Positions 1,203 to 64,000 of a stretch of DNA of 64,000 nt are shown in pieces. Below the pieces are notes generated by a model. The model saw only the letters and a program-made list of their open reading frames with translations, was not told where the DNA came from and did no database searches. Origin of the DNA: Oopsacas minuta (taxonomy: Eukaryota; Animalia; Porifera); contig JAKMXF010000301.1 of NCBI GenBank assembly GCA_024704765.1, positions 279,807 to 343,806 on the forward strand. Reading direction: 5' to 3'. The translations under genes and the position numbers were made by a program. Each line of letters begins with the position of its first letter. Position 1 is the first letter of the stretch.

Positions 1203-2766
1203 CTAAAGTATATACAGAATGTTATTCCGGATAATAGAAAAAGATGAGAAGGAGATATAATCTGTCGAATACCAAGGGCACTATGATTAATATATAATAT
1301 AGCAGAAATTATGCTATCATAACTATTCCAATTGATTAAACAATGGCATTTTGTACTAGTATACTTAGAGGATCCTTTACGTTCAGTTGCATCATCAATA
1401 TTTCCAATAATGGATATTTAAGTGAATATTGCCGATTGTTGTTAGCATGAACATCTACAAAATATTGATATGCAGTAGAGTCCTCGAATAACGGACACAT
1501 TGGAGAATGAACTTTTTACATTATAGTGAAGTGTCTGTTTCTCAGAGAGTGTTCTATATGTTAAAAATCCCGAATAAAATGATTAGAAGTTAAAATATAC
1601 TTTATATGCAGATAAGAATACTACTGCACACATGTACACATAGATATTTACGCAGCCTGTGGTAAGTTTGAATCTTGAAAGAATTTTCTAAACTTCAATA
1701 AATTGTGATTACATAAATTGCCTAGTACATGAATATCTTGTATATGGAATTCAAAGATACTAGCTACAAGATACGTTTTGTTCAAAATTGGACAAAATAT
1801 CAAATGGAAAGTATGTGGCGTTGTTGCTCTTAATACAAGTTTACACCGACAGTCACAATTCGTGCAAATCCGATCGGTAGATATACAGGAGAAATTGCAA
1901 ACTCTCTATTTATGGGGAACATGAGAAAGTGGGGCAATTTGATCCACATTCATTCATGACGATAGAAACTAACCTCTATAAGCGGGGAGTGAGTGAAGGG
2001 AATACTTTAAAGAAAATTATGTCGTTTGAATCAAAAAGTACATACATTGATTAACCTGCGACTATATCAATTACTGAATTAAAATATTACAGTATATAAT
2101 GGCACTTGCAATAGCTTTACTATAATCTCAAAGTTGAAATGTTAGATTTGTCGGATCAAAGAAATAAAAAATGATTTTCAAAACAACCAGTCATTCTCAT
2201 AGTTAAGATGAACATAACATTACTTCGAGTGTGAAAGCACGAGTATACTTATCGACATCGCTTGAAGTAGTTCAAGGCCGGAAATTTTATTTACCATCTC
2301 ATACTACGAGCGTTCAATAAGTCCTAGGCCCTTTACTACTAAAGCGAACACAATTTTTGATATAATTACTCTTTCGCACACATGTTTGTGGCAGACTGAT
2401 AACCAGTCAAAAATATTTTATTGTAATCTTCAGGAGAGATGGCTTTGGGGTCATCTAAACAGCGTTTGATAGGTCGATCCTGCTCTAAAAAGTTTGCTTG
2501 CGAGGAAGTTTTTAGTTTTGAGAACAACGATAAGTTGCATGGGACAATGTCAGTTGAGTAGCCTTGAAGTTCTAGTTTGTGGATATTCTAGCTCGTGTTT
2601 TGATATAAAATACACTACAGAAAGTTAGTGCTCTTTGAGAATCTAGTTTTTAGGTTACTATTTAAGATTTTACTATTGAAGACAAGAATCATTTTGTATT
2701 ACTAGTAGTTTGAAGACAATATATACCAAAAAGGTTTTCAGTATGGAAGGCAGCGGTTGGTAATTA

Positions 2767-5054
2767 CACAGGTCAACAAAATTTAACTTTATTTTCTCAT
2801 CAAGTATTAGATTGACATTTTCTAAGCTAGTTTTTACGCTGAATTCAAATCTGCTTTCAGATTCTCTCCAGCACGTCCAGTTTTCTTTCCATCTACAAGT
2901 CAACGATTTTATGTATTTCCTAAATTTTTCCTGTTATTTTATGCTAGTGGCTGTCTTTTTGTCTTCTTACATGATAGCCATGAAATAAATCAACGTTTCG
3001 ATGTTTTAGATTAATGCCAAGATAATATCAGTTATTATCCTAGCTCTTACATATAATTATTCACATTCATGCATGTATCAACTACTCACAAACTAAGGGG
3101 AAATACATATCCATCTAGGAGTATAAAGGTAGCTAACTAAATTAAAAGTGTTGAGAGTACGACTTCCTTTTATATATCTTGTTGGGATTATCTCTGAAGA
3201 GGCTCCAATAGTAATCGGACATCATGCCCTCATTCCAGAAACCTTGGTATCGGGTTTCCATCTCTTGTATGTCTTGGTGGAATCTCTCACCCTGTTCATC
3301 ACTTACAGCACCAAGGTTCTCAGGGAAAAAATCAAGGTGAGAGTGCAAGAAGTGAAGTTTTAGCGACATGCGAAAGCCCATCTTCTCGTATGCGTTAAGC
3401 AAGGTTCCACTCCTTCTCTCTGTAGTTGGACGACTTCTTGTTGCCCAAAAAGTTTTCACAAACCCATTTGAAAGAATTCCAAGCACTCTTTTCTAATTCG
3501 GATAATATTTTCTCGAAATCTGGATCCCTGAATACTTGTCTGATTTGTGGTCCTACAAATACTCCCTCTTTTAACTTTGCCTCGTTTAGTTTCGGAAATT
3601 TGCCTACCAAATGCAGAAATCCTGCTGAATTTGTTTTGCCCATTGTTTTACCGAATGTTTTCATTAATCCAAGTTTAATATGAAGTGGGGGTAAGAAAAA
3701 TTTGTTTGGATCTACCAATGGCGAATGCTGTAAATTGGTTTTCTCCACTTCATAGGTTCTCTTCGGCCAATCACAATTTTTATAATCTTCACCAGTTGCT
3801 CGGCTGTCTCATAGACATAGGAAACAACAATACTTTGTAAAACCTTGTTGTAAGCCCATCAATAGCCCGATTATCTTAAGATCACCGCAGATATTCCATA
3901 TATGTGTTCTATACTGTATTGCCTCCAAAACTTCCTGCAAATTGACGAAGGTTTCTTTGAGATAGACGGAGTGAGCAATTGGAACGCCAAGCTTTAGATT
4001 TCTGTTATGCACCAGAACAACTTTCAAACTGCGTTTTGACGAATCGATGAAAAGGCGCCAATCAGAGGAAGAATCTTCTTGTAATAGGTTTGCATAGAGT
4101 CCTTCGATATCATTACAATAGCACAGTGGACCATCAGTGGTGTAGTATTGAGCGAGATCGAAATTTCACTTGCGATAGTGGGATACCAGGACATCTTTGT
4201 CGAGTAGGTTTTTCTGTTTGAGCCTGGATGCAAGGAGTTCAGCTTTGTCTTTAGATAAGTCTAGATCCCTGACCAGGTCATTCAATTCTCCCTGTGTAAA
4301 TGTTTGTGGCTCTAGTAATTCATCTTCCGGGACATAATTAGCATCTGTAGAATCTGCATGAACATCTTCCACCATATCAGACCTGATTTTAATTTGCTGT
4401 GGTTTGGGAATTGGGATTGGTAATGAGATGTCGTGTGGAATTGGCCTGCGAGCAGAATCCAAGTCTGGGTAAACAAGAGCGTGCTTATTCTTGGCTGAGA
4501 ATCCTGTAATGTCGATAAGGCAAAAGTAACAATCATCAAGGTGATTTTTCTGTTCCCTCCAGACCATGGGTATTGCAAATGGCATTGAAACTTTCCTTTT
4601 GTTCAACCAATCACGTAGTCCACTTGAACAAGAAGTGCATATAACATGTGGTGCCCACGACTTGTCTTGGTCACCAAGTGGACATTCGAAGTCAATTTGT
4701 ATATGTTCTTTAATTGATTTGTGATTGGCCGTCTTTGTGATTTTACGCAAAAATGACCACAAACGTAACAAAAATTGTCGGGATGAGTTTTACAATTACG
4801 ATGCATGTTTATAATTTGATTTACTTGATTTCAAATAAGTAAAGTCATTATATTCCAGATAATTGAATCAAAATAGGCATGCTCATATAGCAATTTAATA
4901 ACTAGGTAATACTAGACTATTGAAAAAATGGATATTGGATTTCAGAATAGCTAGACGTGCTAGAGAAATTCTGATTGCAGATTCGAGTTCAGCATTCAAA
5001 AGTATGCTAAGATAATTGTATGCGATCTCTGATGAGAAATCTTGTTGAGTTGTG
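2767..5054 (-). mobile_element. Chapaev3-type (CMC superfamily) DNA transposon with frameshifted transposase
   Basis: Imperfect TIRs CACAGGTCAACAAAATTT.. and (reverse complement) CACAACTCAACAAGATTT.., sharing subterminal GCTGAA..CAGCACGTC.AG. 3-bp TTA TSD at 2764-2766 and 5055-5057. ORF pieces 4806->3142: N-terminal HPDNFCYVCG..WAPHVICTSC..PMVWREQKNHLDDCYFC zinc finger; C-terminal LPPLHIKLGLMK and HLDFFPENLGAVSDEQGERFHQD. Confidence 0.85.
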
Positions 5055-5419
5055 TTATTGAACTATTTGTAAAGGGGTCTAGTCAGAGCAATTTGCTGAA
5101 GATCTTGAATATTCCTAGGAGAAGGATATTGGAGGAGTTAGGGATAGGCGGAGGAGTTGACATCTTACATCGATAACTACCTGGAGGATGAAGAAGCGAA
5201 TCTTGCATCACACTTTGAGAAATCCTAAGAACTTAATGAGAGAATTCGCAGAATATTTCGTAGTTCAGTAAAAAAGATTGTCAAAAAGGACATACGCCTC
5301 TCTTCCTACAAATGAAAGTAGGTTCACCTCATTTCCAACCATGTAGAGCAAAAGCGATTTGCATGCAGTAAAGGACTTGTTCGGCGGTTTGCAGATAGCC
5401 TATAAATGTCAAAATGACA

Positions 5420-5830
5420 AGATCGGTTCATCATCATTATCTTCAATTCCAAATGAGCTCAATTATATAAAGAGGACTGAAAAACCGGCCTTCGTGATGG
5501 TTAGGGCTGGAATTTCAGTGCAAAGCCGAAGCCTGCTGGGATTTGTGACATCTGGGGTAAATCAACTCTTCAACATACAAAGAACTTATCTTAGAACCTG
5601 TTGTCATAGCCATAAGTGAAACAATTCTCATTATTCAGTCATTATTGTTTCAACAGGACGGTGCACCAGTCACACGTCAAATACCACTCAGACGTGGCTT
5701 CTAAATAACATCCCGTATATCATCCCTAAGAAGGAATTGCCAGACTCCAGCCTAGATCTCAATCCGTTGGAATTAGCTATCTGGGGAATCTTATAAACAA
5801 ATGCCTGTGCTAAATCTGACACATATACAG
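5420..5830 (+). pseudogene. Fragment of maT-like (DD37D/E) Tc1/mariner transposase
   Basis: Decayed KP.FVMV.AGIS, QQDGAP and .DLNPLE.AIWG motifs with 37-residue spacing after correcting one frameshift. No termini found. Confidence 0.65.
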
Positions 5831-5959
5831 AGTGACTCACGAGATCTTTGAATGGTTACATAATCATTGTTACATTGCAATACAAGAGGTAAATATAAGC
5901 TGAATAAAACATTCTTCAAATAGATATATAATTTATGGACTAATATGTATCAGAACTTA

Positions 5960-6150
5960 AAAGCCACCCTGTAGACTTTAAGTGAAATGTTTTGTGGCCT
6001 AGCATTATCATGCAGTAAATTTAGTCCTCTTGGTCTTGACTTGGGTCTTCGCTCCCAGTAGTGTTTGCGACTTTTGACAGGCAGTTTTTGGCATAAAATT
6101 CTCAAATAATGGTTGCGCTTTGGAGCGGTAATCTTGGCCTTGTGCATTGA
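5960..6150 (-). pseudogene. Short mariner transposase fragment
   Basis: Translation contains NHYLRIL...LNLLHDNARP, the mariner LLHDNARPH motif. Confidence 0.55.
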
Positions 6151-6507
6151 AAAATGTTGAAAACAGATACTTCTGGTATCTGATGTCCGGCCTTGGATTT
6201 AATGGAGGCCGATCTCCTCTCAGTACCCATATAAAATTCTTACATCAGACAGTGGCTCGTCAAACTTAATTCATGATTTATCACCAGTAATTATCTCATA
6301 TAATCTTCTTGGATCTGCGTCAACATACTCAGCAAAGTTATTCTTTGCGAAAAGGGCATTAAATTTGGAAAACAACTTGACACCATAATCACAATATGTG
6401 ACTTCTCTCTTGGCCCATTTTGTAGCAGGTAAGAGACTGATTTTCTTAAGAGATTTTACTCGCAATATACTTTTAGGTATTATTATCATGATCTAGTTAT
6501 CACCTAC

Positions 6508-7900
6508 CTAGTAATCATTGTCATTGGTGTCACGATTGGCACTGTAGATAAATGTCAATTTATGTGCTTTTTGTATGCTAAGCCGGTTTCTGACCTTGCA
6601 ATGAATGTATGCGTTTACACTAAACGCTCGTTCAATATCTGCAGAACTTGCTCGTATAGCTAATAACTTTCTGCTATCTTGATGAAATTTTCTGAGCCTT
6701 GGGAATGCCATCATGAAATTGGGTTTATAGTTTGCCTTACTGTTTTCAATTTTAACTTCTCTGGGACATGTATCTGTTTAGAATGATGGCCACGAATTCA
6801 AAGAATGAGTGGGGAAATTTTCTAGCCATTTCTTTCTGTTCATTGGTGGGAGTAAGTATTCCTTGGTAGTATTTCGGATGTAAAGTAATGCAATTTAGTC
6901 TTCAGATTTGATAAAGTTATGCCTTTTGGTTTCAATTTTGCTTTGACATGTTCTAAGTTTGGATCGTTTGGTATCCGAGCCAATTATACATCGCATCCGC
7001 AATAGAAGCTTTAGAGTTTTGTACTGCATCTAAAAAATGCTTTACTGGCTCTGGGACTTTCAGTAAATCTTTCACATTAGTAAATATTTCTAGGTCATTT
7101 AATTTACTGACGATTGCCTGCTCTATTTCATCAACATGGTCAGAAGAAACCGCAATCATTCCAGGACGGTTTTGCTTGTAGCTTTGGAGAGCATTGACAG
7201 TCTAGAACATCTGGTTACTGAAACAAGCTTGGGTCTAACTAAGGGGTTTATCTAGGTACTTGGTGGGCACCTAAAAGTGTCATTTCAGCACCCATGAAGG
7301 AAACAAAGTGCCGAATATCAGACTCAAATTAGTACAAGATCAATATGTTATCCCCAAAAATTGCCATTTATAGAAAGCCACTGCAAAAAGGTGCCGAATC
7401 AGAAATTCCTGTATAAAGCCCTGGTCTAACTACCTAGAATTTCCGATAGTCAATACGAAATCTTGCTATGATCTTTGAAAAACCAATTAATTTGAATGAT
7501 ATGATTTACAACTCCAGGTGGGGTTAGGTCCAAACTCAATAAATTAATCCGATGTGCATTGCAGCCTGAATATGAATTCCTCCTCTAACAATTTTCATCA
7601 GCTGCTTCATCCGTAGCATTTGCTTTCATTGTCTGTAACAATACTCGTTAATTCACCTCCTATATCTTGTTCAGCATTGTTAATGATCTTTAGACCCATA
7701 TCCTTCAGATATTCAGAAGAGGCTGTATCTCCCTTCTTGTCAATTGTTCATAGTGATAATCTTCACCCGTTGACAAACATTTTAAGCATGTACCAATAGT
7801 TGATGCCCGGGTAATATCACTGCAACTATCTAAAAGTAAACAAACCTCCTTACTTTTCAATTTTTGCACATGTCTTTCCTTAATGATCCGTATTGTTCAT
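6508..7900 (-). pseudogene. Decayed hAT transposase (catalytic core remnants plus hATC dimerisation domain)
   Basis: 6508-6714: ASSADIERAFSVNAYIHCKVRNRLSIQKAHKLTFIY (hATC). Upstream remnants SIVTDNES and CNAHRINLL near 7530-7680. Boundaries approximate. Confidence 0.75.
7241..7423. mobile_element. hAT-type MITE (183 bp) inserted in the hAT relic
   Basis: Exact 8-bp TSD GTCTAACT at 7233-7240 and 7424-7431. Termini AAGGGGTTTATCTAGG and (reverse complement) CAGGGCTTTATACAGG. Confidence 0.75.
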
Positions 7901-8964
7901 CCAGTCAGCGATTGCGAGTAAGTTTTGAACTTGGTGGTGTATATGATGGTCTAATAAAAGCACCATATTTTTAAAGTAGTGATAATCACCAAAATTAAAT
8001 TGAATGTTACAAGTATAAAACGCATCGCGACTGCTTTATCAAAGGATTCTTTCTCCTTAGAATTTGTCATGCTTATTCGATCACTAGTCAGGTATGATTG
8101 CTCTGTTTCGATAAGATCACCCTCGCTCAGAATAGGTATACCGCTACAACTCGTCAATTTAAGGTTTGAAATGAATTCCAGTCTATCTCAGTAACTTGAT
8201 TTGAATAGATGTACATATGCTGATATGAGCTCGCAATCTGATATACTTATCACTCAATTCTACATTACAATGTATACATTTCTGCTTAGAAGGTATTGAT
8301 GACGGGCAGTATTGATCGTGGACAGGATCTAATTTTCGTCCACCAAAGTTATTGGACTTATCGCAATGATTCTTTGAATGACTTCAGTCTAATGAAAATA
8401 AAAAATGATAGTATGTAGTAAAACAATTCATACTAAATAAACGAAAGGAATATCTACAATCATAGCATTATATATACTAAGGCAATGTCACTCTATCGAA
8501 ATTTGGACCATGGATTGTCATTAACATCAGACTACTTTACATCACAACTTTTGTATTTCTTAATATATCAAAGTGATTTCAACATTTATGTGTATCCAAC
8601 AACTGCTTACTCCTTAGAACATATTTTGGTATAATTTTGCCTGATTTATTAAACTTCAGTTTTGCACATGTTTGAATATCCAATTCAGTTGTATTGTCCG
8701 CGCGAATTGATCGCTTATAGTGCTCTAAGAATATGTACAATTCATTATGAGGATAGAGATCTTATGTAGCAACATGCAAACTATGTATTAGCATCAATAT
8801 TTGTGATTACTTTTGAGATTTTGTGTCTTAAACGTCTTAATATGAAAAATAATTTCCCCACCCATAAATTTTATATTCAATGTTGATAATATATAATAAT
8901 TATTGTAAATATTTTCGTTCTTCCAATTACTACATTATTTGTACTGCATCATCACATATTCAAC

Positions 8965-49109: not shown

Positions 49110-51387
49110 CAGTGGTTCTTAAACTGTGGTACGGGAGGTATCTCATTATTATTTAGGTATATGCAAAATTTGAATATTTTATACTAAAATACTCATTGTA
49201 ATACGTTAGTAAAGGTAAAAACATATGGATGGTTGGCTCAGAACAGTGACCGTAAGGAAGTGAAGTGAGGGTGGAGAGGACAATATTTCGATTGTCGCAT
49301 ACGAATTGGAGTACTATGAAGCGACCACAAGTGCCTGTGGTAGGACAGTGAGTGAAGTCAGCACGACAGCTAACGTTTGTAGCAAACGCAGCAAAGTTAT
49401 AAGAAAATATGATCAGAGTTATCTCAGTTTTGGATTCAGTTGGACCGGGACGGAGGGAGAGCCTAGGCCGCAGTGTGTAATGTGTGGTGATGTTCTCAGC
49501 AATGAAAGCATGAAGCCTGCGCATCTCAAACGGCATCTTACAACCAAACACGTGGTATTAAAAGACAAACCGATTGCATTCTTTCAGAGAAAACTTGATG
49601 AACTGAGCAGTCAAAGGCAATCATTGTGTCCTGGACTACACCCGTAGCCAAAGCACAGGAAGCCTCCTACTGTGACAGCTTACGCATAGTCAAAGCCGGT
49701 AAGCCACGTGATATTGGCGAGGAGCTGTGTCCACCGTTACCAAAAGAGATTACACACATTATGTGTGGGGAGAAGGCTGCCAGACAGTGAAACTTGGTGC
49801 CGCTTTCAAACGACACCGTATCGCGGAGAATAGTTGACATGGCAGATGACGTTAAAAACATACTGATCGAGCGTATCAAGAAGAGTCGTTATTTTTCAAT
49901 ACAGCTAGACGAGACAACTGACGTAGCAGATTTAGCTAATTTGCTAGTTTATGTCAGATAGGAATACGATGGAGCATCTCAAGAGGACTTTTCGTTCTGT
50001 CAGACACTGATAACGAGAACTACAGCAGAGCATATTTTTCTGTTATTGAATATTTTTATGGAAGAGAATTGTCTCGATTGGAAAAAGTGTGTTGGAGTTT
50101 GCACCGATGGTGCCAGGGCCATGACCGGGCGCCACAACTGGGTAGCAGCTCGAATTAGCGAAGTGGCCACCGAGATGCGATGGACCCACTGCAGCATTCA
50201 TCGATAAGCCCTGGCAGTGAAGAAATGTCTGAAGATCTAAAGTCAGTGTTGGACTCTGCTGTAAAACGGTGAATTTTATCAAGGCACGTCCGATGAATTC
50301 CAGTCTCTTTGGTGTGCTCTGTGATTAAATAAGCAGCGAGCATGTCCAACTCTTGCTCCATACCGAAGTAAGATGGTTGTCAAGAGGAAGGGTACTTACG
50401 AGGCTGTTCGAATTGCACTGGAAGGTGCAGATGTTCCTACAAGACAAACAATCTTCCTTGTTACACCTTTTTGAAAACAGTGAGTGGCTGAGTCAACTGG
50501 CTTACCTGTCAGACATTTTCTCTCGCTTGAAAGAGCTAAATTTGGGACTACAAGGACTGTCTATTACTGTTTTTGACGTGAATGACAAAATCAACGCAAT
50601 GGTGAAAAAGCTGCAGCTGTTTGAGATGAAAATCAAGGCAGGTGATGTTTCAGCTTTCCCCACTTTGGAGAGTTTTATATCTGAGAACAAGCTTGACCCT
50701 TGATGATGGTTTCAGAGACAACATTGTGGCGCACATTGATTCACTGAGACAACAGTTCTGCAACTACTATCCAGTATCAGCCGAAGTCAACAACTGGATG
50801 AGGAACCCGTTCACCGTCGAAGTTGCTGACATGCCTGAGGATTTCAGCACCGGTGTGCAGGAGAGTTTTTTGGAATTATCTTGCGACGAAACGTTAAAGT
50901 CCGATTTCAAAAGGATTTCATTGTTGGATTTTTGGATACAAAGACACGGCGAATGCCCAGCGCTTTAGAACAGGGCCACATGGTTTCTTCTTCCATTCGC
51001 GACTACATATCTGTGCGAGAAAGGCTTCTCATCTCGTGTTGCGATCAAGACAAAATACAGAAATAGGATGGACGCCGAGCCAGACCTGAGATTGAAGCTG
51101 ACCTCGATTGACCCAGACATCGCAAGGCTTGGTACACGAAAGCAGGCGCACCCTTCTCACTGATAGACCTGTAAGTCGATGTACACCAAAATGTACATCC
51201 ATAAACATTATTTGAATTATCCTAATGTCGATCATATTCTATTTATTGATATTATGTTTATTTTACGAGCGTTCTTCATATGCTTCATTATTCGGGGGTG
51301 AATTTAAATATCGATCTTTATGATGGTACGCGGAGACTCTAATATTTGGTGAAGTGGTACGTGCTGGAAAAAGTTTGAGAACCACTG
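49110..51387 (+). mobile_element. Buster/Charlie-type hAT element (ZBED5/FAM200-like transposase), full length with multiple stops and frameshifts
   Basis: TIRs CAGTGGTTCTTAAACT and AGTTTGAGAACCACTG with exact 8-bp TSD ATATAGAT. BED finger PQCVMCGDVLSNESMKPAHLKRHLTTKH, plus FSIQLDETTD, CTDGARAMTG, HTEVRWLSRG and C-terminal YLCE.GFS..KQAHPSH. Confidence 0.95.
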
Positions 51388-51886
51388 ATATAGATAAATT
51401 ACATGAAAAAATAATTCGGCTGTTTAGGGTCAACCATTCAGAGTAGATGTTCCATGTGTCCCCCTTTCATACATATTACTTATCCGAGGAGCATAGTAAA
51501 GTTTTGCATGACGGACTTCAATACTGGTCTTTTTATCCTTCTGATAACGGTTCATATGTTAGTTTTTATGTTCCACCAGTGTCTTGGGTTGTTCTGGTAT
51601 ATCCTGTCTTTAATATAGCCCACAGAAAAACATCTGGGGCCGTATTCACTAAGCATACTTAAACCGTATTCACTAAGATTGGTATTCACTAAGATTTAAG
51701 CTCATACTTAAGTATGTACTTAAGTACAAAAGTTAAGTAACCTACCGAGGTTGCTTAAGTTATTCAAGCTCTATTTTAAGTTTCCAAACATATTATATTT
51801 ATCGATAACATTGATGTAATCACTTCAGTCACTCGTTTTTTTTGATTAATTCATACTTTCACTATAAATTATGATTTTCTATGATG

Positions 51887-52636
51887 TTACAATATGACTA
51901 AATCGTATATCGAAAGCTGCTGCTGTTGATCTTTTTCTAAAAGTCTCTGCTTTTTATGACGATAATACTCCCTCTGCTCTTCAATCAGCTGTAGTTGAAC
52001 CGAGAATACTTCCATCTGTTTAAGGAGCACTTCTCGTTGCAGAGGAAGTAAATCAGAGACCTTTGTTGACTGTTCGATGCTCCTCTTACGCCTACGCCTC
52101 CCCTCTGGACGACTGTTAACTACAGTAACTTCTGGTCCCTCAAACACTGGTGTTACTTCTCTGCTTTCGCTAATCTCAGTGTGTGAAGGCAATGTTGTTG
52201 AAGCTTGAAACATATCAACACTACCACATATTCCAGAGAACGCTGGCGTACTTGAGAACATCTGTGATACTCTCTCCGTCACAGATGTGGATATTTCCCT
52301 ATCGGAGCTAAGGATCCGGATGTCTTCATCCTCCACTTCACCAGCTTCATTTGGCCCTCCTCCTGTCCTCCTCGCTTCCCTTCGACTGGAATCCACACGG
52401 GCTTTTGCGGAACCTTTTAGATTGTTCCACTTCTTCTTTACATCTTTCACATCTCGGTTGTTGCCATGGATGGAATTGATTTTCCTCATAACATTGTTCC
52501 AAAGCCTCGTCTTTTTTATGTTTATCTCCGCGCACTGACCAGCAGTACCTCTCAATATATCTCCAGCATCCTGGATTGCCTCAATGAGTGTATACTCCTC
52601 CTCCTTTGTCCAATTTACTTTGCGACCTTTGTCCAT
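51887..52636 (-). CDS. Harbinger-associated Myb/SANT-like DNA-binding protein (249 aa, intact ORF)
   Basis: MDKGRKVNWTKEEEYTLIE..KKTRLWNNVMRKINS..RDVKDVKKKWNNLK..RRTGGG is a Myb/SANT-like (MSANTD/NAIF1-type) domain, followed by a C-terminal coiled coil. The start at 52636 is chosen by domain alignment. Confidence 0.85.
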   Translation of the reverse strand: MDKGRKVNWTKEEEYTLIEAIQDAGDILRGTAGQCAEINIKKTRLWNNVMRKINSIHGNNRDVKDVKKKWNNLKGSAKARVDSSRREARRTGGGPNEAGEVEDEDIRILSSDREISTSVTERVSQMFSSTPAFSGICGSVDMFQASTTLPSHTEISESREVTPVFEGPEVTVVNSRPEGRRRRKRSIEQSTKVSDLLPLQREVLLKQMEVFSVQLQLIEEQREYYRHKKQRLLEKDQQQQLSIYDLVIL

Positions 52637-52746
52637 ACTCTTGCTTTGGAATATCAATAACCTCCACCAATTTATAGTTTTCATAATGCAACAACTAGCT
52701 CCAAATTCAAGTGCGATACTTGATACATTTCGCAATTAAATATCCC

Positions 52747-58250: not shown

Positions 58251-58291
58251 TCCCCTTCCTTATTTTTTTGCAACTAGGTATTCTAGGCTAG
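58251..58291 (+). promoter_or_regulatory. 3' splice-site-like signal upstream of the M16 ATG
   Basis: CCCCTTCCTTATTTTTTTGCAACTAG|GTATTCTAG|GCTAG|ATG: a pyrimidine tract followed by three AGs, the last abutting the ATG. Confidence 0.5.
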
Positions 58292-61200
58292 ATGACTGCT
58301 CGGAATACTCGTTATAGGAATGTATCTGAGGATAGTACAGATGAAGATATTCATATTGAAGATGATACAATTCCGTTGTCGAGTCAACCAGATGAAGACC
58401 TTTCTAATCTGAATGTTAACACTCATTCTAAGGTTAAATCTTATCAGTTGTGCAAGGTTAAACATCGTGAGAAGTGCGCTGCTATAACATTCACTTTGCT
58501 TACATTGGGATTCGCTATTATCACGATGACGTTAATATACGTAAGTGCTTTCGCCTTACGACATGATCACGTTCTAGATAATGGAGGTTCTGATCCAGAT
58601 ATCCAGAATTGTATCCATGCTCATCTCAGTAATGGTATTATTCTGCCATTACTTGACAAAAAAACTTATTTATACAAACAATTGAATAATAGTTTACGGG
58701 TTTTGGTTATAAGTGATCCAGATACCAAAGTATCAGGTGCTTCTCTGTCTATCCTTTCTGGATCCTTTAATGAAGGTCCTGTTCCAGGTTTGGCTCACTT
58801 TTGTGAGCATTTATTATTTTTAGGAAATAAGAAATATCAATTACCTGACGCTTTTATGACGTACGTTGCTGAACACAATGGATTTACTAATGCTTATACT
58901 GACTTGGGCATTACCAATTTTTATTTTCAAGTTGAATCTGATTTCTTTTTTCAAGCTCTTGATATGTTCTCTAACCTTTTCATACATCCACTTTTTAACT
59001 TTGAATATATTCAGAAAGAGATTAATGCAGTTAATTCCGAATACGAATTAGATAAATTTTCAGATGAATGGAGGCTATTTCGTCTCTTGCAACTTGGTTC
59101 TAATGAATCACACCCGTTTCACCAGTTTAACATCGGTAATACTGAAACTTTGAACATCACTAATATTCAAAGTTATGTGTCTAGTTACTTTTACAAATAT
59201 TTTAGTTCGAATCTAATGACTGTTGTGTTATATGGAAGTGAAAATATCACTACATTGTCTCAAATTGCAGAATTACGATTTGGTATTGTTCCGAATTTGA
59301 ATTTATTTGAAAGAATCTACCTACCTCCATATTCTTCATTACCCACATTTATACTAGCTCAAGCTCTAGAACAAACTAATGCAATAATTTTAGTATTTCA
59401 ATTACCATCATTTACGAAATATTTTAACTATTCGCCAAATTTTATTCTCTACTTATTGGATTTTCCTGGAAGTATTGGTTTCATAAGTAGCATGAGACAA
59501 TCGGGATTAGTTGATGATATTCATGTAACTACTCAGCAGCTTGTATCAAGTACTTTATTGAAGATTACTATCCTAGTTCAGAGTAAATTGATATTTGACC
59601 AAAAATGGTTTTTTCTTGTTGAATCTTTTTTCTCTTATATCCAACAAATACGCCAACTTAATTCGAATTTAATGGAGGAAATGTTTGACTCTTGGAAAAA
59701 GGTCAATAGTTTCAAGTTTGATTATGAGTTAAATGGTTCTCAAAAAGTTTCTTCCATAGTTTCGAATTTAGCTCGTCAGATGCAATTCATTCATTCTACA
59801 AAAGATTTGTTGTTACCTCCCTGTTCGCTCCTATTTAATTACACTTTCATTTCTACTACATTACTCTCACAGATTAAACCTTCTAATCTTCTCATTATAA
59901 TGTATTCAAATGAATTCAATTCATCTGATAATCAAGGTTGGCGAAATTTGACAATGAATGATCAGTATTTTGACATCGATTTTGTTGTTTACCCTATTAA
60001 TTCTGATTATGTTTCTAAATGGGACAGTGTAAATTCAAGTGCATTTGTTCTCCCAGATGATAATTTTATTCCCTCTATTTTACGAGTTGAGCCTTCTCTC
60101 AGTGAAGGTTTTAATCCTGAGTTGTCTTTATTCGGAAGTCTTGTCATTTGGCACCTTTATAATTCCAAGTTTTCAGACCCTTATATCAAATTTTCTTGTA
60201 TACTTGATACTAGTGACAAATATTATAACTTAGAGCATTATACTGCTCTCCAATTATTCAAATTTATTATTTATACAATTTTTCCAGATGAGATGTACAT
60301 GTATCAAAACTTTTATTCTCTCTCAATTCCTATCCCAAATTATTTCAATAGATTGTCACTAAATTTTGAAGGATATTCTGATAATATCTTATTTGAGAGT
60401 TTCATTGATAAAGCTACTGATATATTGACCAATTCATCATTCTTAACCAATAGCTATGCTTATACTATAGCTTATAATATGTATTCAAACACCTTGGCTA
60501 ATTATTTCAAACAATCAACTGCTGTTGATTTAGTGATTGATAATTTCAAGCTTTTATTCTTTCCAACTGCATATAAGATTGTTGACATTTACGAAAGCTT
60601 ACAAAATATCACGAAAGATAAGTTTATTCATTATTTATACGAAACTAATACAAACTCATTTCTAACTTGCTTCTCATTTGGAAATGTTGATAAATCTTTA
60701 TCCCTAAGGACTGGTAATAAAATTCAACAAGAATTTGGATCAGACTTGATGATATCTCCCGTAATTCAACAATTGACTCATTTATGCCAAGGAGTTAACT
60801 ATACCTTCTCGCGAAATAACTCTAACAGCCAAGATTTAAATTCAGTGATAGATGTTGTATATCAATTTGGCTCAATTTGTGGGGTGAAGAAGTTAGGTGA
60901 CAGTTGTAATACTACCCAATTACAAAGCTATGTGCTGTTGAAATTACTAGTGAGTATAATGTCAACGCACTTCTTCTCCATATTGAGAACTGAGGAACAA
61001 TTGGGTTACCTAGTTCAAAATTTTATATGGACAGAATCAGATGAAATTTTTTTGCATTTTCTTATTGAAAGTCCTTATAATAGCCCTGATTATCTAGAAG
61101 AGAGAATCGATCATTTTCTTTTGAATTTTAGCAAAACACTCGGATCAATACCTCTAGACAATTGGGATGATATTATTAGCGCTTATAACCAAACCATACT

Positions 61201-61483
61201 AGTTGAACCAAATTCATTTGATACTGCCTTTGAAAGTGTTTGGTCTGAAATTAGCACTAGACAATATCAGTTTTCGAGGAATTCTCAAATTAAGGATATT
61301 CTTAATACAATAACAGCAACAGAAATTATTTCTTATTTTCATATGATATTCTTTGATGCTCCAGTGCCAAGAGTTAACTTCAAACTTTTTGCTCATCATC
61401 TACATCAAACTACACAAAGCATCAATACACATGACTTAGACTACGATACGATTAACATCTTTAAACAGAATCTTAACTGTTAG
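58292..61483 (+). CDS. M16A family zinc metallopeptidase (insulin-degrading enzyme/pitrilysin-like), 1063 aa, single exon, with N-terminal type II transmembrane anchor
   Basis: Inverted zinc motif GLAHFCEHLLFLGNKKY (H169-H173), TNAYTD, EINAVNSEY (third-ligand Glu region), HPFHQFNIGNTETL and C-terminal LRTEEQLGYLV all match IDE motifs. A hydrophobic segment at about aa 63-89 is preceded by KVKHREK. Confidence 0.93.
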   Translation: MTARNTRYRNVSEDSTDEDIHIEDDTIPLSSQPDEDLSNLNVNTHSKVKSYQLCKVKHREKCAAITFTLLTLGFAIITMTLIYVSAFALRHDHVLDNGGSDPDIQNCIHAHLSNGIILPLLDKKTYLYKQLNNSLRVLVISDPDTKVSGASLSILSGSFNEGPVPGLAHFCEHLLFLGNKKYQLPDAFMTYVAEHNGFTNAYTDLGITNFYFQVESDFFFQALDMFSNLFIHPLFNFEYIQKEINAVNSEYELDKFSDEWRLFRLLQLGSNESHPFHQFNIGNTETLNITNIQSYVSSYFYKYFSSNLMTVVLYGSENITTLSQIAELRFGIVPNLNLFERIYLPPYSSLPTFILAQALEQTNAIILVFQLPSFTKYFNYSPNFILYLLDFPGSIGFISSMRQSGLVDDIHVTTQQLVSSTLLKITILVQSKLIFDQKWFFLVESFFSYIQQIRQLNSNLMEEMFDSWKKVNSFKFDYELNGSQKVSSIVSNLARQMQFIHSTKDLLLPPCSLLFNYTFISTTLLSQIKPSNLLIIMYSNEFNSSDNQGWRNLTMNDQYFDIDFVVYPINSDYVSKWDSVNSSAFVLPDDNFIPSILRVEPSLSEGFNPELSLFGSLVIWHLYNSKFSDPYIKFSCILDTSDKYYNLEHYTALQLFKFIIYTIFPDEMYMYQNFYSLSIPIPNYFNRLSLNFEGYSDNILFESFIDKATDILTNSSFLTNSYAYTIAYNMYSNTLANYFKQSTAVDLVIDNFKLLFFPTAYKIVDIYESLQNITKDKFIHYLYETNTNSFLTCFSFGNVDKSLSLRTGNKIQQEFGSDLMISPVIQQLTHLCQGVNYTFSRNNSNSQDLNSVIDVVYQFGSICGVKKLGDSCNTTQLQSYVLLKLLVSIMSTHFFSILRTEEQLGYLVQNFIWTESDEIFLHFLIESPYNSPDYLEERIDHFLLNFSKTLGSIPLDNWDDIISAYNQTILVEPNSFDTAFESVWSEISTRQYQFSRNSQIKDILNTITATEIISYFHMIFFDAPVPRVNFKLFAHHLHQTTQSINTHDLDYDTINIFKQNLNC

Positions 61484-64000
61484 TTTCATAAATTCTCTTG
61501 TAAACATGAACATCTTTTCAATCGGGAAGTCCTATTTATTATTTACATAGAATAATTGATTTTCTCATGTAAATTGTAATGTAAATAGCATCTATTCATA
61601 GGAATATAGTATATGTATATATGAATGTGGTTTACCTTATACGTATGAACTCTTGGAGCATCTGAAGTGCTTATATAATTGATTTCTGGGACTTAACTAG
61701 GTATCCCAGGGAATATGCTCATTTTACGAGCTTAACCCAGAAATGCTTTTGTCCGTTATCAAGGAAGGATTATGGCATGCTATTTTGAATATGAATCGGC
61801 AAATACAAGATGTGGTGCATAATCAGGGAAATATGGTAGAACTTGATTAAAATTACAATAAAATAACCTGAATTCAGTAAACTTTACAAAATCAATTGAA
61901 TTCCTGAGATCGACTCAGTACCATGGCAAGCTCATGACAACCGACCTGGCCATCTAATATAGCCGAGCCTGCTTAGTAGGCCATCAGAAATTGAACTAAC
62001 ATTGTTATTACAAAATACCGGCCTGACAAGTCCCAAAGCTACAGCCATGCAGTTAAACACCCTTTAGAATCAGATCAAATGGCATAGCCTACTAGATATG
62101 AAACCATCTGGAACGTTTATCTACAAAATGTTGAAATGCCAAATGGTCTATAACCGTTTCTGAACAAAATATTAATAATAAGTCGGGTATATCCCTTATA
62201 CTCGCTATGTTGATTTGACCATTATTGAGACGATTATGGAGTTATACGAATATGTTTACAAAACATGTGAAATTCATCAACTTTTCTTGTCTGTGCGAGG
62301 AGAAAAGTGCAAACTTTATCATAACATATTTTTTATATTTTGTACAAAATCGATTCTACATCAATTGGCATATCAACATATTTTGAACCTAGACCAATAA
62401 TAAGGTTTTAAATGGGTTTCAAAGATGGAACATTTTGTATACATATTTGTCAATTACGCAATCAGATTACTTACCTTCAATCCGAAAATTTTAACAAAGT
62501 GGTTTTTGTGACTATATTCGGGTGAAAATTACCAATTCCTTTATCCCTGGTACTGAAAGTGCTCAGTTAGCAGGCCTATCTTTAGTAGACTATGCAGATG
62601 AAAATATTTTGTCACTTTGTTTAATTATTTGTAAATTTATGTTACAAATTAAGTACGATTTAGTATATTCGCGATTACATTGTTTATTTACGGATTAATT
62701 TATAAATAATTGATTCGTGCTTACACTAGTGTAAGTACGTATATTTTTAATGATCGTATTGTATCACGTAGCTAATTGGAAATTTTGAGAATTATTTATG
62801 ACTTTCAGATTCTCGTAACTTTTGATGGAATTTCAAATTCTTTGAGGACAAACAATTGGTAATGTTTTGTATATAAAGTTGTGGACACGATCTGTACCCC
62901 CCTTAATAATTCCTTCCTGAGGTACAAGTGGAATTATAGGGATTAGAGAGAACAGTAAATTTTATGAACAATGCGTCACTTCTCACAAAGTAAACCCTAT
63001 TGGCGATTATCTTATATTCAAGTGTTAGTTACTAGCATTTAAACACTGATAAAACATTCTAAACTCTCGTGATTTTGCTTCTATTTCTACAAGCTTTTGT
63101 ATTTTGGCACCTAGGATTACATTTCACCTTTGCCTTTCTGCAAGAACATGGTGAATTTTAAACAATTCTTGCCCAGACAAGTTTATTTCAAACATTGATT
63201 CATTCTACGTATACGAACAGCATCAGGAACAGAATCGATTGTCTGAAACTTGTGTGACCAGGGCTGGGGTTGGTTAACCGAATTTAGGGGGAGGGTAACA
63301 ACTTTTAAATATTAGTTGTTAACAGGTTAACGTTACAATTATTTTTAACACAATCAATGATGTTTTGTGACTAAGATTTACAATATGAATACATAGATAT
63401 TTTATATGAAATCACGATAATATTATATATTTCAAAACGATTGAAATTTGAGAAATTTGACATCTAATGATACTGAACTAGCAGAATTTGTGTATATGTT
63501 GCAGTGCAAACGCGAGATTAGTCTAACGCGTTCACACTGGTGTAAACGCACGGAATATTCAAGTTTTATTACTCTTTCGATTACACCAGTGTAACCGCAA
63601 GTAGTCTTGTAATAGAATATTGTGGTATATTTAGAAAAGCTATTTATTTATATACGTACTATATTGAATTACGTATTATAGTGTAATGTGAAACTACGCA
63701 ATAGATTTCGGGAACAATCACTCCCCCAGGTTTGATTTTGTTTCCTAATTTGTTTAAGGTGGAGGTAATATGGACGAAGCCCCCATATTACCCTCCTTCC
63801 AGTACCGCATACCAATGCCGTCAGATTAAGATTCGCCATCAGCGAGTCAAGCGCTAATGCCAGGCCAGTCCTTGAGATGGTTTCAAAATTTGCAGCCCTA
63901 GCCAACTGTGAAACTGTGCCGCCCTTCACCCAATTTGTTAACACCACTATGTGCCTTATGACATTGGTGTTACAACTCCTATTGCATTTTTGCAGGGACA

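What the first reader, a model, noticed from the sequence alone, without database searches (positions are those of the whole stretch)
58292..61483. Intronless insulinase/IDE homologue rebuilt as a type II membrane-anchored luminal or ecto-peptidase
Seen in sequence: a complete four-domain M16A enzyme with intact HxxEH is preceded by a ~62-aa tail, a basic stretch KVKHREK and a ~27-aa hydrophobic helix. The tail contains YRNV (YxxPhi-like), an acidic cluster SEDSTDED and EDDTIPL. After the helix I count about 17 N-x-S/T sequons by eye, only moderately above what this N/S/T-rich composition gives by chance, plus a Cys-bounded loop ICGVKKLGDSC. Established: animal IDE and nardilysin are mainly soluble and not type II anchored, whereas secreted or TM-bearing M16A expansions are described in apicomplexans. 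Inference: this is a secretory-pathway or cell-surface peptide-degrading enzyme with sorting signals, possibly a lineage-specific retrocopy or innovation (single 3.2-kb exon beside a gene with large introns).
Basis: partly seen in the sequence, partly recalled or inferred. Interest (0 to 1): 0.7.

Follow-up and report, generated by a model that had tools for sequence, protein, structure and literature searches.

The report
Membrane-anchored insulinase of glass sponges
The glass sponge Oopsacas minuta transcribes a single-exon gene for an insulin-degrading-enzyme-like zinc peptidase that, unlike the soluble animal enzyme, carries a cytoplasmic sorting tail and one membrane helix that should place the catalytic chamber in the lumen or outside the cell; the design is conserved in four related assemblies and is a new variant of a well-known enzyme family.

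Summary
Window 58292-61483 (+) is one 1063-codon ORF for a complete M16A (insulysin-type) peptidase with all catalytic residues. It follows a 61-aa tail and a single strong hydrophobic helix (residues 62-90).

The window is Oopsacas minuta, a glass sponge. Four relatives (42-55% identity) in four other large assemblies keep the same architecture. They share YxxPhi, an acidic cluster, the helix, positive-inside charges and eight cysteines past the helix. All are single ORFs.

One run, probably RNA-seq, covers 58276-61527 at 30-900 times the flanks. It starts at an AG acceptor 14 nt before the ATG, so tail and helix are in the mRNA.

In 1.84 billion representatives the clade is isolated: 1785-1900 bits, then 436. 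It does not group with animal IDE (AU p 0.0018, long-branch caveat). It groups with divergent eukaryotic M16A proteins, several with anchors of their own.

Not supported: a recent retrocopy, since single-exon genes are common in glass sponges and the relatives are also unspliced. Also not supported: sequon enrichment (p 0.11).

Verdict: a new variant of a known kind, of moderate interest. Topology and activity are inferred. The scan had noted this same stretch once more in another reading (s1-285091), not on other DNA.

The parts
58262..58277 (+). Pyrimidine-rich tract ending in AG: 3' splice (probably trans-splice) acceptor
   Evidence: Sequence read. A contig of run X4 fits from 58276 on and is preceded by 9 non-genomic letters, AAAACTTAC. 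No copy of these letters with a donor site lies in the 58 kb upstream.
58278..58291 (+). 14-nt 5' untranslated stretch holding an in-frame TAG just before the ATG
58292..61483 (+). Complete coding sequence, 1063 codons plus stop, single exon
   Evidence: X4 depth is 1600-8000 across it, against 8-15 upstream and 49 downstream.
58292..58474 (+). Cytoplasmic tail, residues 1-61: YxxPhi (8-11), acidic cluster (12-19), ED-x-[IM]-P-L (23-29), basic juxtamembrane stretch (47-61)
   Evidence: Y8, R9, T16, D17, D25 and P28 are invariant in five sequences. YxxPhi is kept 5 of 5. The AF2 model is disordered here, pLDDT under 50.
58475..58561 (+). Signal-anchor transmembrane helix, residues 62-90
   Evidence: KD maximum 2.13, 2.08-2.62 in the relatives. 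AF2 helix 59-88. Flank charges are +5 on the N side and -3 on the C side.
58562..58609 (+). Short disordered juxtamembrane linker, residues 91-106
   Evidence: pLDDT under 50 for residues 89-106
58610..61480 (+). Four-domain M16A clamshell, residues 107-1063
   Evidence: AF2 mean pLDDT 84.6, pTM 0.83. Foldseek best matches are human IDE, TM-score 0.89 by target. phmmer to IDE 4e-73.
58796..58810 (+). Zinc-binding and catalytic motif HFCEH (H169, E172, H173)
   Evidence: E243, E250, R899 and Y906 are also invariant across 22 M16A proteins.
60878..60907 (+). Cys-bounded loop C863...C872
   Evidence: Invariant in five sequences. Both cysteines are shared with P0069 and absent from cytosolic IDE/Ste23.
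61484..61527 (+). Short 3' untranslated region; transcript coverage ends near 61527
   Evidence: X4 depth falls from 8064 to 49 after bin 61334-61530, and a contig ends in adapter at 61527.

Best explanation
This is an expressed gene of the glass sponge Oopsacas minuta for a type II (N-in, C-out) membrane-anchored M16A zinc peptidase. The 61-residue N-terminal tail stays in the cytoplasm and carries sorting signals: a conserved YxxPhi, a casein-kinase-type acidic cluster and a dileucine-like ED-x-[IM]-P-L. Residues 62-90 act as an uncleaved signal anchor. After a short flexible linker, the whole IDE-like clamshell faces the lumen of the secretory or endocytic pathway, or the cell surface. There it would enclose and cut peptides of up to a few tens of residues, using the H169/H173/E250 zinc site and the E172 general base. 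Eight conserved cysteines would form disulfides. By position and tail logic it would work like the type II ectopeptidases of family M13 (neprilysin, ECE-1), but with an M16A catalytic chamber. Shown here: ORF, family, fold, catalytic residues, conservation of the architecture in five assemblies, transcription across the tail and helix. Inferred: topology, disulfides, glycosylation, trafficking, activity and substrates.
For: Family and fold. Catalytic and substrate-binding residues are invariant. A single strong hydrophobic segment at 62-90 occurs in all five clade members and in none of the other 63 word-search hits at that position. Positive-inside rule: N flank +2 to +5, C flank -2 to -4 in all five. 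No Met lies between the helix and the catalytic motif other than M79 inside the helix, so no soluble isoform can arise by internal initiation (sequence). C107, C511, C636, C793, C832, C863, C872 and the terminal C1063 are invariant in the clade. C636 and C793 co-occur across 342 M16A proteins (12 with both, 2 and 32 with one, 296 with neither), and 9 of the 12 carriers of both have an N-terminal hydrophobic segment. Sequon N836 is kept 5 of 5 and also in P0069. Transcription: X4 depth is 1600-8000 from 58276 to 61527, against 8-49 in the flanks. The other three runs are flat, and the acceptor lies 14 nt before the ATG. The Oopsacas project did produce RNA-seq.
Against: No dedicated topology predictor (DeepTMHMM, SignalP) was available; topology rests on hydropathy, flank charges and an AF2 helix. 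Sequon numbers are no higher than composition predicts in any of the five (p 0.14-0.72). Cys-Cys distances could not be measured because model coordinates are not exposed. The cysteine co-occurrence test is not corrected for shared ancestry. Run X4 is not on record as RNA, and contigs cannot show an exact transcript start. The four relatives are only presumed to be glass sponges. IDE-family enzymes are otherwise mostly cytosolic.
Confidence: 0.72

Rival explanations
1. Membrane-tethered but cytosol-facing: the helix anchors the enzyme to an organelle or the plasma membrane with the short tail outside or in the lumen and the clamshell in the cytosol, where IDE normally works.
For: IDE and Ste23 relatives are cytosolic. 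Sequons are not enriched. C171 in HFCEH is also present in cytosolic IDE.
Against: Flank charges are +5/-3 and conserved, which argues for N-in. A 61-aa acidic tail with YxxPhi and an acidic cluster makes sense only in the cytoplasm. Eight clade-invariant cysteines are absent from cytosolic IDE.
Confidence: 0.1
2. The anchored form is only a precursor: cleavage in the disordered linker (residues 89-106) sheds a soluble secreted or lysosomal peptidase. This is compatible with the main reading up to the point of shedding.
For: The linker is disordered in the model. Many M16A relatives near it in the tree are secreted through cleavable signal peptides.
Against: Strong conservation of the tail motifs suggests the anchored form is itself trafficked. 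No conserved dibasic or other processing site stands out in the linker.
Confidence: 0.15
3. A recent retrocopy or fast-evolving duplicate of the sponge's own cytosolic IDE that picked up an N-terminal extension.
For: It is a single exon, and the stem branch is very long (1.67-2.63 changes per site), which could pull it away from animal IDE artificially.
Against: Relatives in four other assemblies down to 42% identity are all unspliced and share the tail and helix, so the state is old. The AU test rejects a clade with animal IDE, p 0.0018. No poly(A) remnant follows the gene. Single-exon genes are common in glass sponges.
Confidence: 0.05
4. Acquired by an ancestor of glass sponges from a protist by horizontal transfer, rather than an ancient animal paralogue lost elsewhere.
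For: In both trees the clade sits among protist and unnamed eukaryote sequences (Ancoracysta, EukProt entries, metagenome contigs), not with opisthokont IDE/Ste23. It is intronless.
Against: Support inside that group is low and all branches are long. No close donor exists (next best 436 bits against 1785-1900). Composition and genomic context are those of the host.
Confidence: 0.12

Closest known systems
Insulin-degrading enzyme (insulysin, MEROPS M16A; human IDE structures such as 2g47, 2jg4)
   Same: Same four-domain clamshell over its full length (TM-score 0.89). Same HxxEH...E zinc site, including the Cys in HFCEH, and the same R/Y pair in the C-terminal half. About 23-25% identity.
   Different: IDE is soluble, with no signal anchor, and is not disulfide-bonded. 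The sponge protein has a tail, a TM helix, eight extra conserved cysteines and no PTS1-like C-terminus. It does not group with animal IDE in the trees.
Unnamed environmental eukaryote M16A lineage P0069 / P0233 / P0235
   Same: These are also tail + TM helix + M16A core. The tail has an acidic run and an (E/D)GIPLL acidic dileucine. They share C636, C793, the C863/C872 loop and sequons at 516, 714 and 836. P0069 is the best non-clade hit (436 bits, 28% identity).
   Different: The tail is shorter, the motif order differs, and the P0233 lineage has no YxxPhi. P0069 has a roughly 130-residue Ser/Thr/Pro-rich stalk. The organism is unknown (compact, about 50% G+C genome). Monophyly with the sponge clade is not resolved.
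Apicomplexan insulinase-like proteases (Cryptosporidium INS family, Toxoplasma toxolysins)
   Same: M16 enzymes routed into the secretory pathway by signal peptides, some with transmembrane domains (papers listed, e.g. PMC11478815, PMC6532270).
   Different: They belong to parasite-specific expansions and secretory organelles and are not animal genes. No sequence comparison was made here.
Neprilysin / endothelin-converting enzyme (MEROPS M13 type II ectopeptidases)
   Same: By analogy only, from general knowledge: a short cytoplasmic tail with sorting motifs, a signal anchor, and a large disulfide-bonded zinc oligopeptidase ectodomain restricted to small peptides.
   Different: The fold and motif are unrelated (HExxH gluzincin against the inverted HxxEH of M16). 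Not tested here.

Membership tests
Peptidase family M16, subfamily A (pitrilysin/insulysin type) | Inverted zinc motif HxxEH in the first domain | tested here: met
   HFCEH at 169-173, invariant in 5 clade members and 22 aligned M16A proteins
Peptidase family M16, subfamily A (pitrilysin/insulysin type) | Distal Glu zinc ligand and its partner Glu about 70-80 residues downstream (IDE E189 and E182; numbering from memory) | tested here: met
   E250 and E243 in EINAVNSEYE align with the IDE motif and are invariant
Peptidase family M16, subfamily A (pitrilysin/insulysin type) | Four homologous alpha/beta domains in one chain of about 1000 residues that form a closed chamber | tested here: met
   Pfam M16, M16_C, PqqF-like_C_4. 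AF2 pTM 0.83. Foldseek to IDE over about 990 columns, TM-score 0.89 by target.
Peptidase family M16, subfamily A (pitrilysin/insulysin type) | Substrate-anchoring Arg/Tyr in the C-terminal half (IDE R824 and Y831; numbering from memory) | tested here: met
   R899 and Y906 in LRTEEQLGY are invariant
Peptidase family M16, subfamily A (pitrilysin/insulysin type) | Zinc-dependent oligopeptidase activity | not testable with these tools
   Needs recombinant ectodomain and peptide substrates
Animal insulin-degrading enzyme orthologue group | Groups with animal IDE in a phylogeny | tested here: not met
   It falls outside the opisthokont IDE/Ste23 clade in two trees. AU p 0.0018 against a joint clade. 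Long-branch caveat applies; nardilysin was not sampled.
Animal insulin-degrading enzyme orthologue group | Soluble, with no signal peptide or anchor | tested here: not met
   Hydrophobic helix at 62-90, KD 2.13. The C-terminus is NLNC.
Type II (signal-anchor) membrane protein | One uncleaved hydrophobic helix of 19 or more residues well inside the N-terminus | tested here: met
   KD 2.08-2.62 in five sequences, starting at about residue 62. AF2 helix 59-88. Prediction only.
Type II (signal-anchor) membrane protein | Positive-inside charge balance with the N side more basic | tested here: met
   +5/-3, +4/-4, +4/-3, +3/-2 and +2/-2 over 15-residue flanks
Type II (signal-anchor) membrane protein | Luminal marks on the C-terminal domain (disulfides, N-glycans) | tested here: inconclusive
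   Eight clade-invariant cysteines and one invariant sequon. C636 and C793 co-occur. But sequon counts match composition, and no distances or chemistry are available.
Tyrosine-based and acidic-cluster sorting signals | YxxPhi with a bulky hydrophobic residue at +3, plus a Ser/Thr-containing acidic run, in the cytoplasmic part | tested here: met
   YRNV, YRAV, YRAV, YRHI, YRPM; T16 and D17 invariant within an acidic run. Function not testable here.
Processed retrocopy | Intronless copy of an intron-bearing parent, with a poly(A) remnant and recent origin | tested here: not met
   No A-run after the gene. Four relatives down to 42% identity are also single ORFs. The parent gene was not sought.
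Spliced-leader trans-spliced mRNA | A non-genomic leader joined at an AG acceptor upstream of the start codon | tested here: inconclusive
   One X4 contig carries 9 foreign letters at the acceptor 58276/77. No cis exon was found.

The most novel reading that the evidence does not exclude
Glass sponges retain, as a highly expressed gene, an ancient secretory-pathway branch of M16A that other sampled animals lack. This branch is a type II 'ecto-insulysin' cycling between surface, endosomes and TGN. It would serve their syncytial tissue as the peptide-clearing or phagosomal peptide-digesting enzyme, the role taken by M13 neprilysin-type ectoenzymes in bilaterians. The tail-plus-anchor module would be homologous with that of the P0069 lineage of unnamed protists, which makes membrane-anchored M16A an old eukaryotic invention rather than a sponge novelty.
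Probability: 0.25. Interest if true: 0.6.

Novelty: new variant of a known kind. Interest (0 to 1): 0.45.

Why it matters
M16A 'cryptases' such as IDE are textbook soluble enzymes, and how they reach extracellular substrates is a long-running puzzle. A natural animal M16A that is built for the lumen or cell surface, with sorting tail, signal anchor and conserved cysteines, shows the chamber can work in an oxidising, membrane-tethered setting. It also offers a tractable comparison for IDE engineering and for peptide turnover in an early-branching, syncytial animal that lacks many metazoan core genes. The isolated position of the clade bears on how many M16A lineages the first animals had.

Tried and rejected
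- **Sequon enrichment as evidence for a luminal domain:** rejected. No clade member exceeds composition-preserving shuffles.
- **Cis 5' exon for the 9 foreign letters:** two chance-level matches in the window, neither followed by a donor.
- **Comparing the leader with the published glass sponge spliced leader:** the sequence is only in a supplementary figure and is not in the text.
- **Finished 'careful' IQ-TREE search on 40 rows:** it did not finish in two 300-s runs, so the quick PMSF tree was used.
- **Naming the organisms behind the nearest outgroups:** cluster look-ups and contig contexts gave no names for P0069, P0146, P0156, P0208, P0173 or P0205. A word search with P0069 found only unnamed metagenome relatives.
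- **Cys-Cys distances in the AF2 model:** coordinates are not exposed, so disulfide pairing could not be checked.
- **A canonical IDE or nardilysin in Oopsacas:** not findable with these tools. Nardilysin was not in the tree.
- **Species identity of ERZ25766962, ERZ25072730, ERZ25072740 and ERZ20067936:** not established.
- **Conservation of the upstream acceptor among relatives:** the alignment of upstream regions was uninformative.
Full report
**What is in the sequence.** Window 58292-61483 (+) is one uninterrupted ORF of 1063 codons. An in-frame TAG directly precedes the ATG.
- YRNV at 8-11
- SEDSTDED at 12-19
- EDDTIPL at 23-29
- KVKHREK at 55-61
- HFCEH at 169-173
- ICGVKKLGDSC at 862-872

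The only strong hydropathy peak before the catalytic motif is residues 62-90, with a Kyte-Doolittle maximum of 2.13 over 19 residues. The only other window above 1.6 is a core helix at 880-898. There are 17 sequons after the helix, against 12.7 +/- 3.1 in shuffles (p 0.11). None of the four relatives exceeds its own composition either (p 0.14-0.72).

**Family and fold.**
- Pfam finds Peptidase_M16, Peptidase_M16_C and PqqF-like_C_4.
- NCBIfam gives sub-threshold pitrilysin and PqqF matches.
- The best solved relatives are human and rat IDE, at 4e-73 over residues 110-1026.
- An AlphaFold2 model built on a 42-sequence alignment has mean pLDDT 84.6 and pTM 0.83.
- In that model residues 1-59 and 89-106 are disordered, residues 59-88 form one long helix, and 107-1063 form a confident core.
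- Foldseek's top 50 PDB matches are all IDE, with TM-score about 0.89 normalised by target.
- H169, E172, H173, E243, E250, R899 and Y906 are invariant in an alignment of 22 diverse M16A proteins.

Nothing suggests a dead enzyme.

**Organism and gene structure.** The exact protein lies on contig JAKMXF010000301.1 of assembly GCA_024704765.1. That WGS project is the glass sponge Oopsacas minuta (PMC10280926). The paper reports 1.59 introns per gene. The Aphrocallistes vastus genome paper reports many single-exon genes (PMC10282587). A single 3.2-kb exon is therefore ordinary here. No A-run follows the gene.

**Conservation.** A word search found four full-length relatives of 1052-1066 residues at 55, 54, 52 and 42% identity, then a drop to about 25%.
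- Each relative is a single ORF on a 0.5-1.2 Mb contig of a different ENA assembly.
- This fits one orthologue per species. That these species are glass sponges is my presumption, not shown.
- The alignment keeps Y8, R9, T16, D17, D25, P28, the helix, and cysteines 54, 107, 171, 511, 636, 793, 832, 863, 872 and the very last residue C1063.
- YxxPhi is kept in all five: YRNV, YRAV, YRAV, YRHI, YRPM.
- Fifteen-residue flanks of the helix carry +2 to +5 on the N side and -2 to -4 on the C side in all five.

A basic N flank, a tail full of cytoplasmic-type sorting motifs, and eight conserved cysteines beyond the helix all point to the same topology: N-in, C-out. C171 is left out of that count because cytosolic IDE also has it. 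The only Met between the helix region and the catalytic motif is M79, inside the helix. No soluble form can therefore arise from internal initiation.

**Transcription.** Four runs of one study hold the stretch. Three show flat, DNA-like depth of about 40, 104 and 44. One of these carries Nextera adapters, which matches the project's mate-pair libraries. The fourth run, X4, carries TruSeq adapters and behaves differently:
- Depth is 8-15 upstream.
- Depth is 1600-8000 from the bin that holds 58276 to the bin that ends at 61530.
- Depth is 49 downstream.

The Oopsacas project included RNA-seq. I read X4 as that library, although its kind is not on record. One X4 contig fits from 58276 and is preceded by nine letters, AAAACTTAC, that are not in the genome there. 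Positions 58276-58277 are the AG that ends a pyrimidine-rich tract. The nine letters occur twice in the window, at chance level, and neither site is followed by a donor. A roughly 37-nt trans-spliced leader is reported for A. vastus, but I could not obtain its sequence. The 5' end is thus probably trans-spliced 14 nt before the ATG. This rests on one contig.

**How isolated the clade is.** A profile of the five sequences was scored against 1.84 billion cluster representatives. Its own two clusters score 1900 and 1785 bits. The next hit, P0069, scores 436 bits, followed by a smooth continuum from 392 bits down. Among the best 150 many have N-terminal signal peptides. A few have internal anchors: P0069, P0156, P0208, P0126, P0146 and Balamuthia P0115.

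P0069 sits on a 6-kb gene-dense genomic contig from SRR25073305. Its tail has RYK, EGIPLL and an acidic run, followed by a helix, a Ser/Thr/Pro-rich stalk and the M16A core. It shares the following with the sponge clade:
- C636 and C793
- the C863/C872 loop
- sequons at 516, 714 and 836

Its relatives P0233 and P0235 start MSFKDGIPLL, then an acidic run, then a helix. That lineage therefore conserves a canonical acidic dileucine tail. None of these organisms could be named. Their contexts are eukaryotic.

**Phylogeny.**
- A FastTree of 161 rows and an IQ-TREE quick search under LG+C20 PMSF on 40 rows place the sponge clade in a 14-row group with SH-aLRT 97. The clade itself has support 100 and a stem of 1.67 changes per site.
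- That group holds P0146, P0069+P0098, P0156, P0208, P0173, P0205, a EukProt entry and Ancoracysta.
- It is separate from the fungal plus animal IDE/Ste23 clade, which has support 96.
- With the other long rows removed, the clade (stem 2.63) still stays outside opisthokont IDE.
- An AU test rejects a joint clade with animal IDE (p 0.0018).

Four caveats apply. The hypothesis was framed after seeing the tree. Branches are long and composition is skewed. The careful search did not finish. Nardilysin was not sampled. I conclude that this is not a recent remodelling of the animal IDE gene. Whether it is an old paralogue or a transfer stays open.

**Cysteine co-occurrence.** Across 342 aligned M16A proteins, C636 and C793 occur together in 12, alone in 2 and 32, and are absent in 296 (Fisher 4e-10). 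Nine of the 12 carriers of both have an N-terminal hydrophobic segment. The test is not corrected for relatedness and depends on the alignment. It is supportive only.

**Literature.** Secretory and TM-bearing M16 proteases are described for Cryptosporidium. My searches found no description of a type II M16A in animals. Neither glass sponge genome paper mentions insulinase, M16 or peptidases. These were limited full-text searches, not proof of absence.

**Verdict.** It is wrong or unsupported on retrocopy origin and on sequon enrichment. It needs qualifying on lineage specificity. This is a new variant of a known kind, of moderate interest. The same stretch was noted once more by the scan in another reading (s1-285091); nothing similar was noted on other DNA.

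Noticed in passing
window 58262-58291: Nine non-genomic letters (AAAACTTAC) precede an AG acceptor in a probable RNA-seq contig. This may be the 3' end of the Oopsacas spliced leader. If confirmed on other genes, it would give the SL sequence for this species.
   Followed up: partly
L006:12-398 (contig of SRR25073305): The 3' end of a ZIP zinc-transporter gene lies 99 bp upstream of the anchored M16A gene P0069 on the same strand. A zinc importer sits next to a zinc peptidase in a very compact, unnamed eukaryote genome.
   Followed up: no
window 50353-52735: Transposon-derived ORFs lie upstream of the peptidase gene: a FAM200/GTF2IRD2-like fragment and a 282-aa Myb_DNA-bind_5 ORF on the minus strand. 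They sit within a block of higher G+C (0.40 against 0.32-0.34 around it). A DDE_1 ORF lies just beyond the window's end.
   Followed up: no
window 62247 and 62787-62788: Three of four runs read T instead of C at 62247, and all runs show a one-letter insertion near 62787/62788. This points to a polymorphism or a small assembly error downstream of the gene.
   Followed up: no
P0098 (1475 aa) and P0073 (1835 aa): P0098 is a signal-peptide-bearing M16A with a long C-terminal extension and is sister to P0069. P0073 looks like a tandem double M16A whose first copy has HLCQH in place of HxxEH.
   Followed up: no
L001, L004, L005: 20-45 nt before the ATG: The three closest relatives share a block resembling TAGC-TC-TCTAGCTGATTAT upstream of the start codon that Oopsacas lacks. 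It may be a conserved acceptor or a core promoter element.
   Followed up: no
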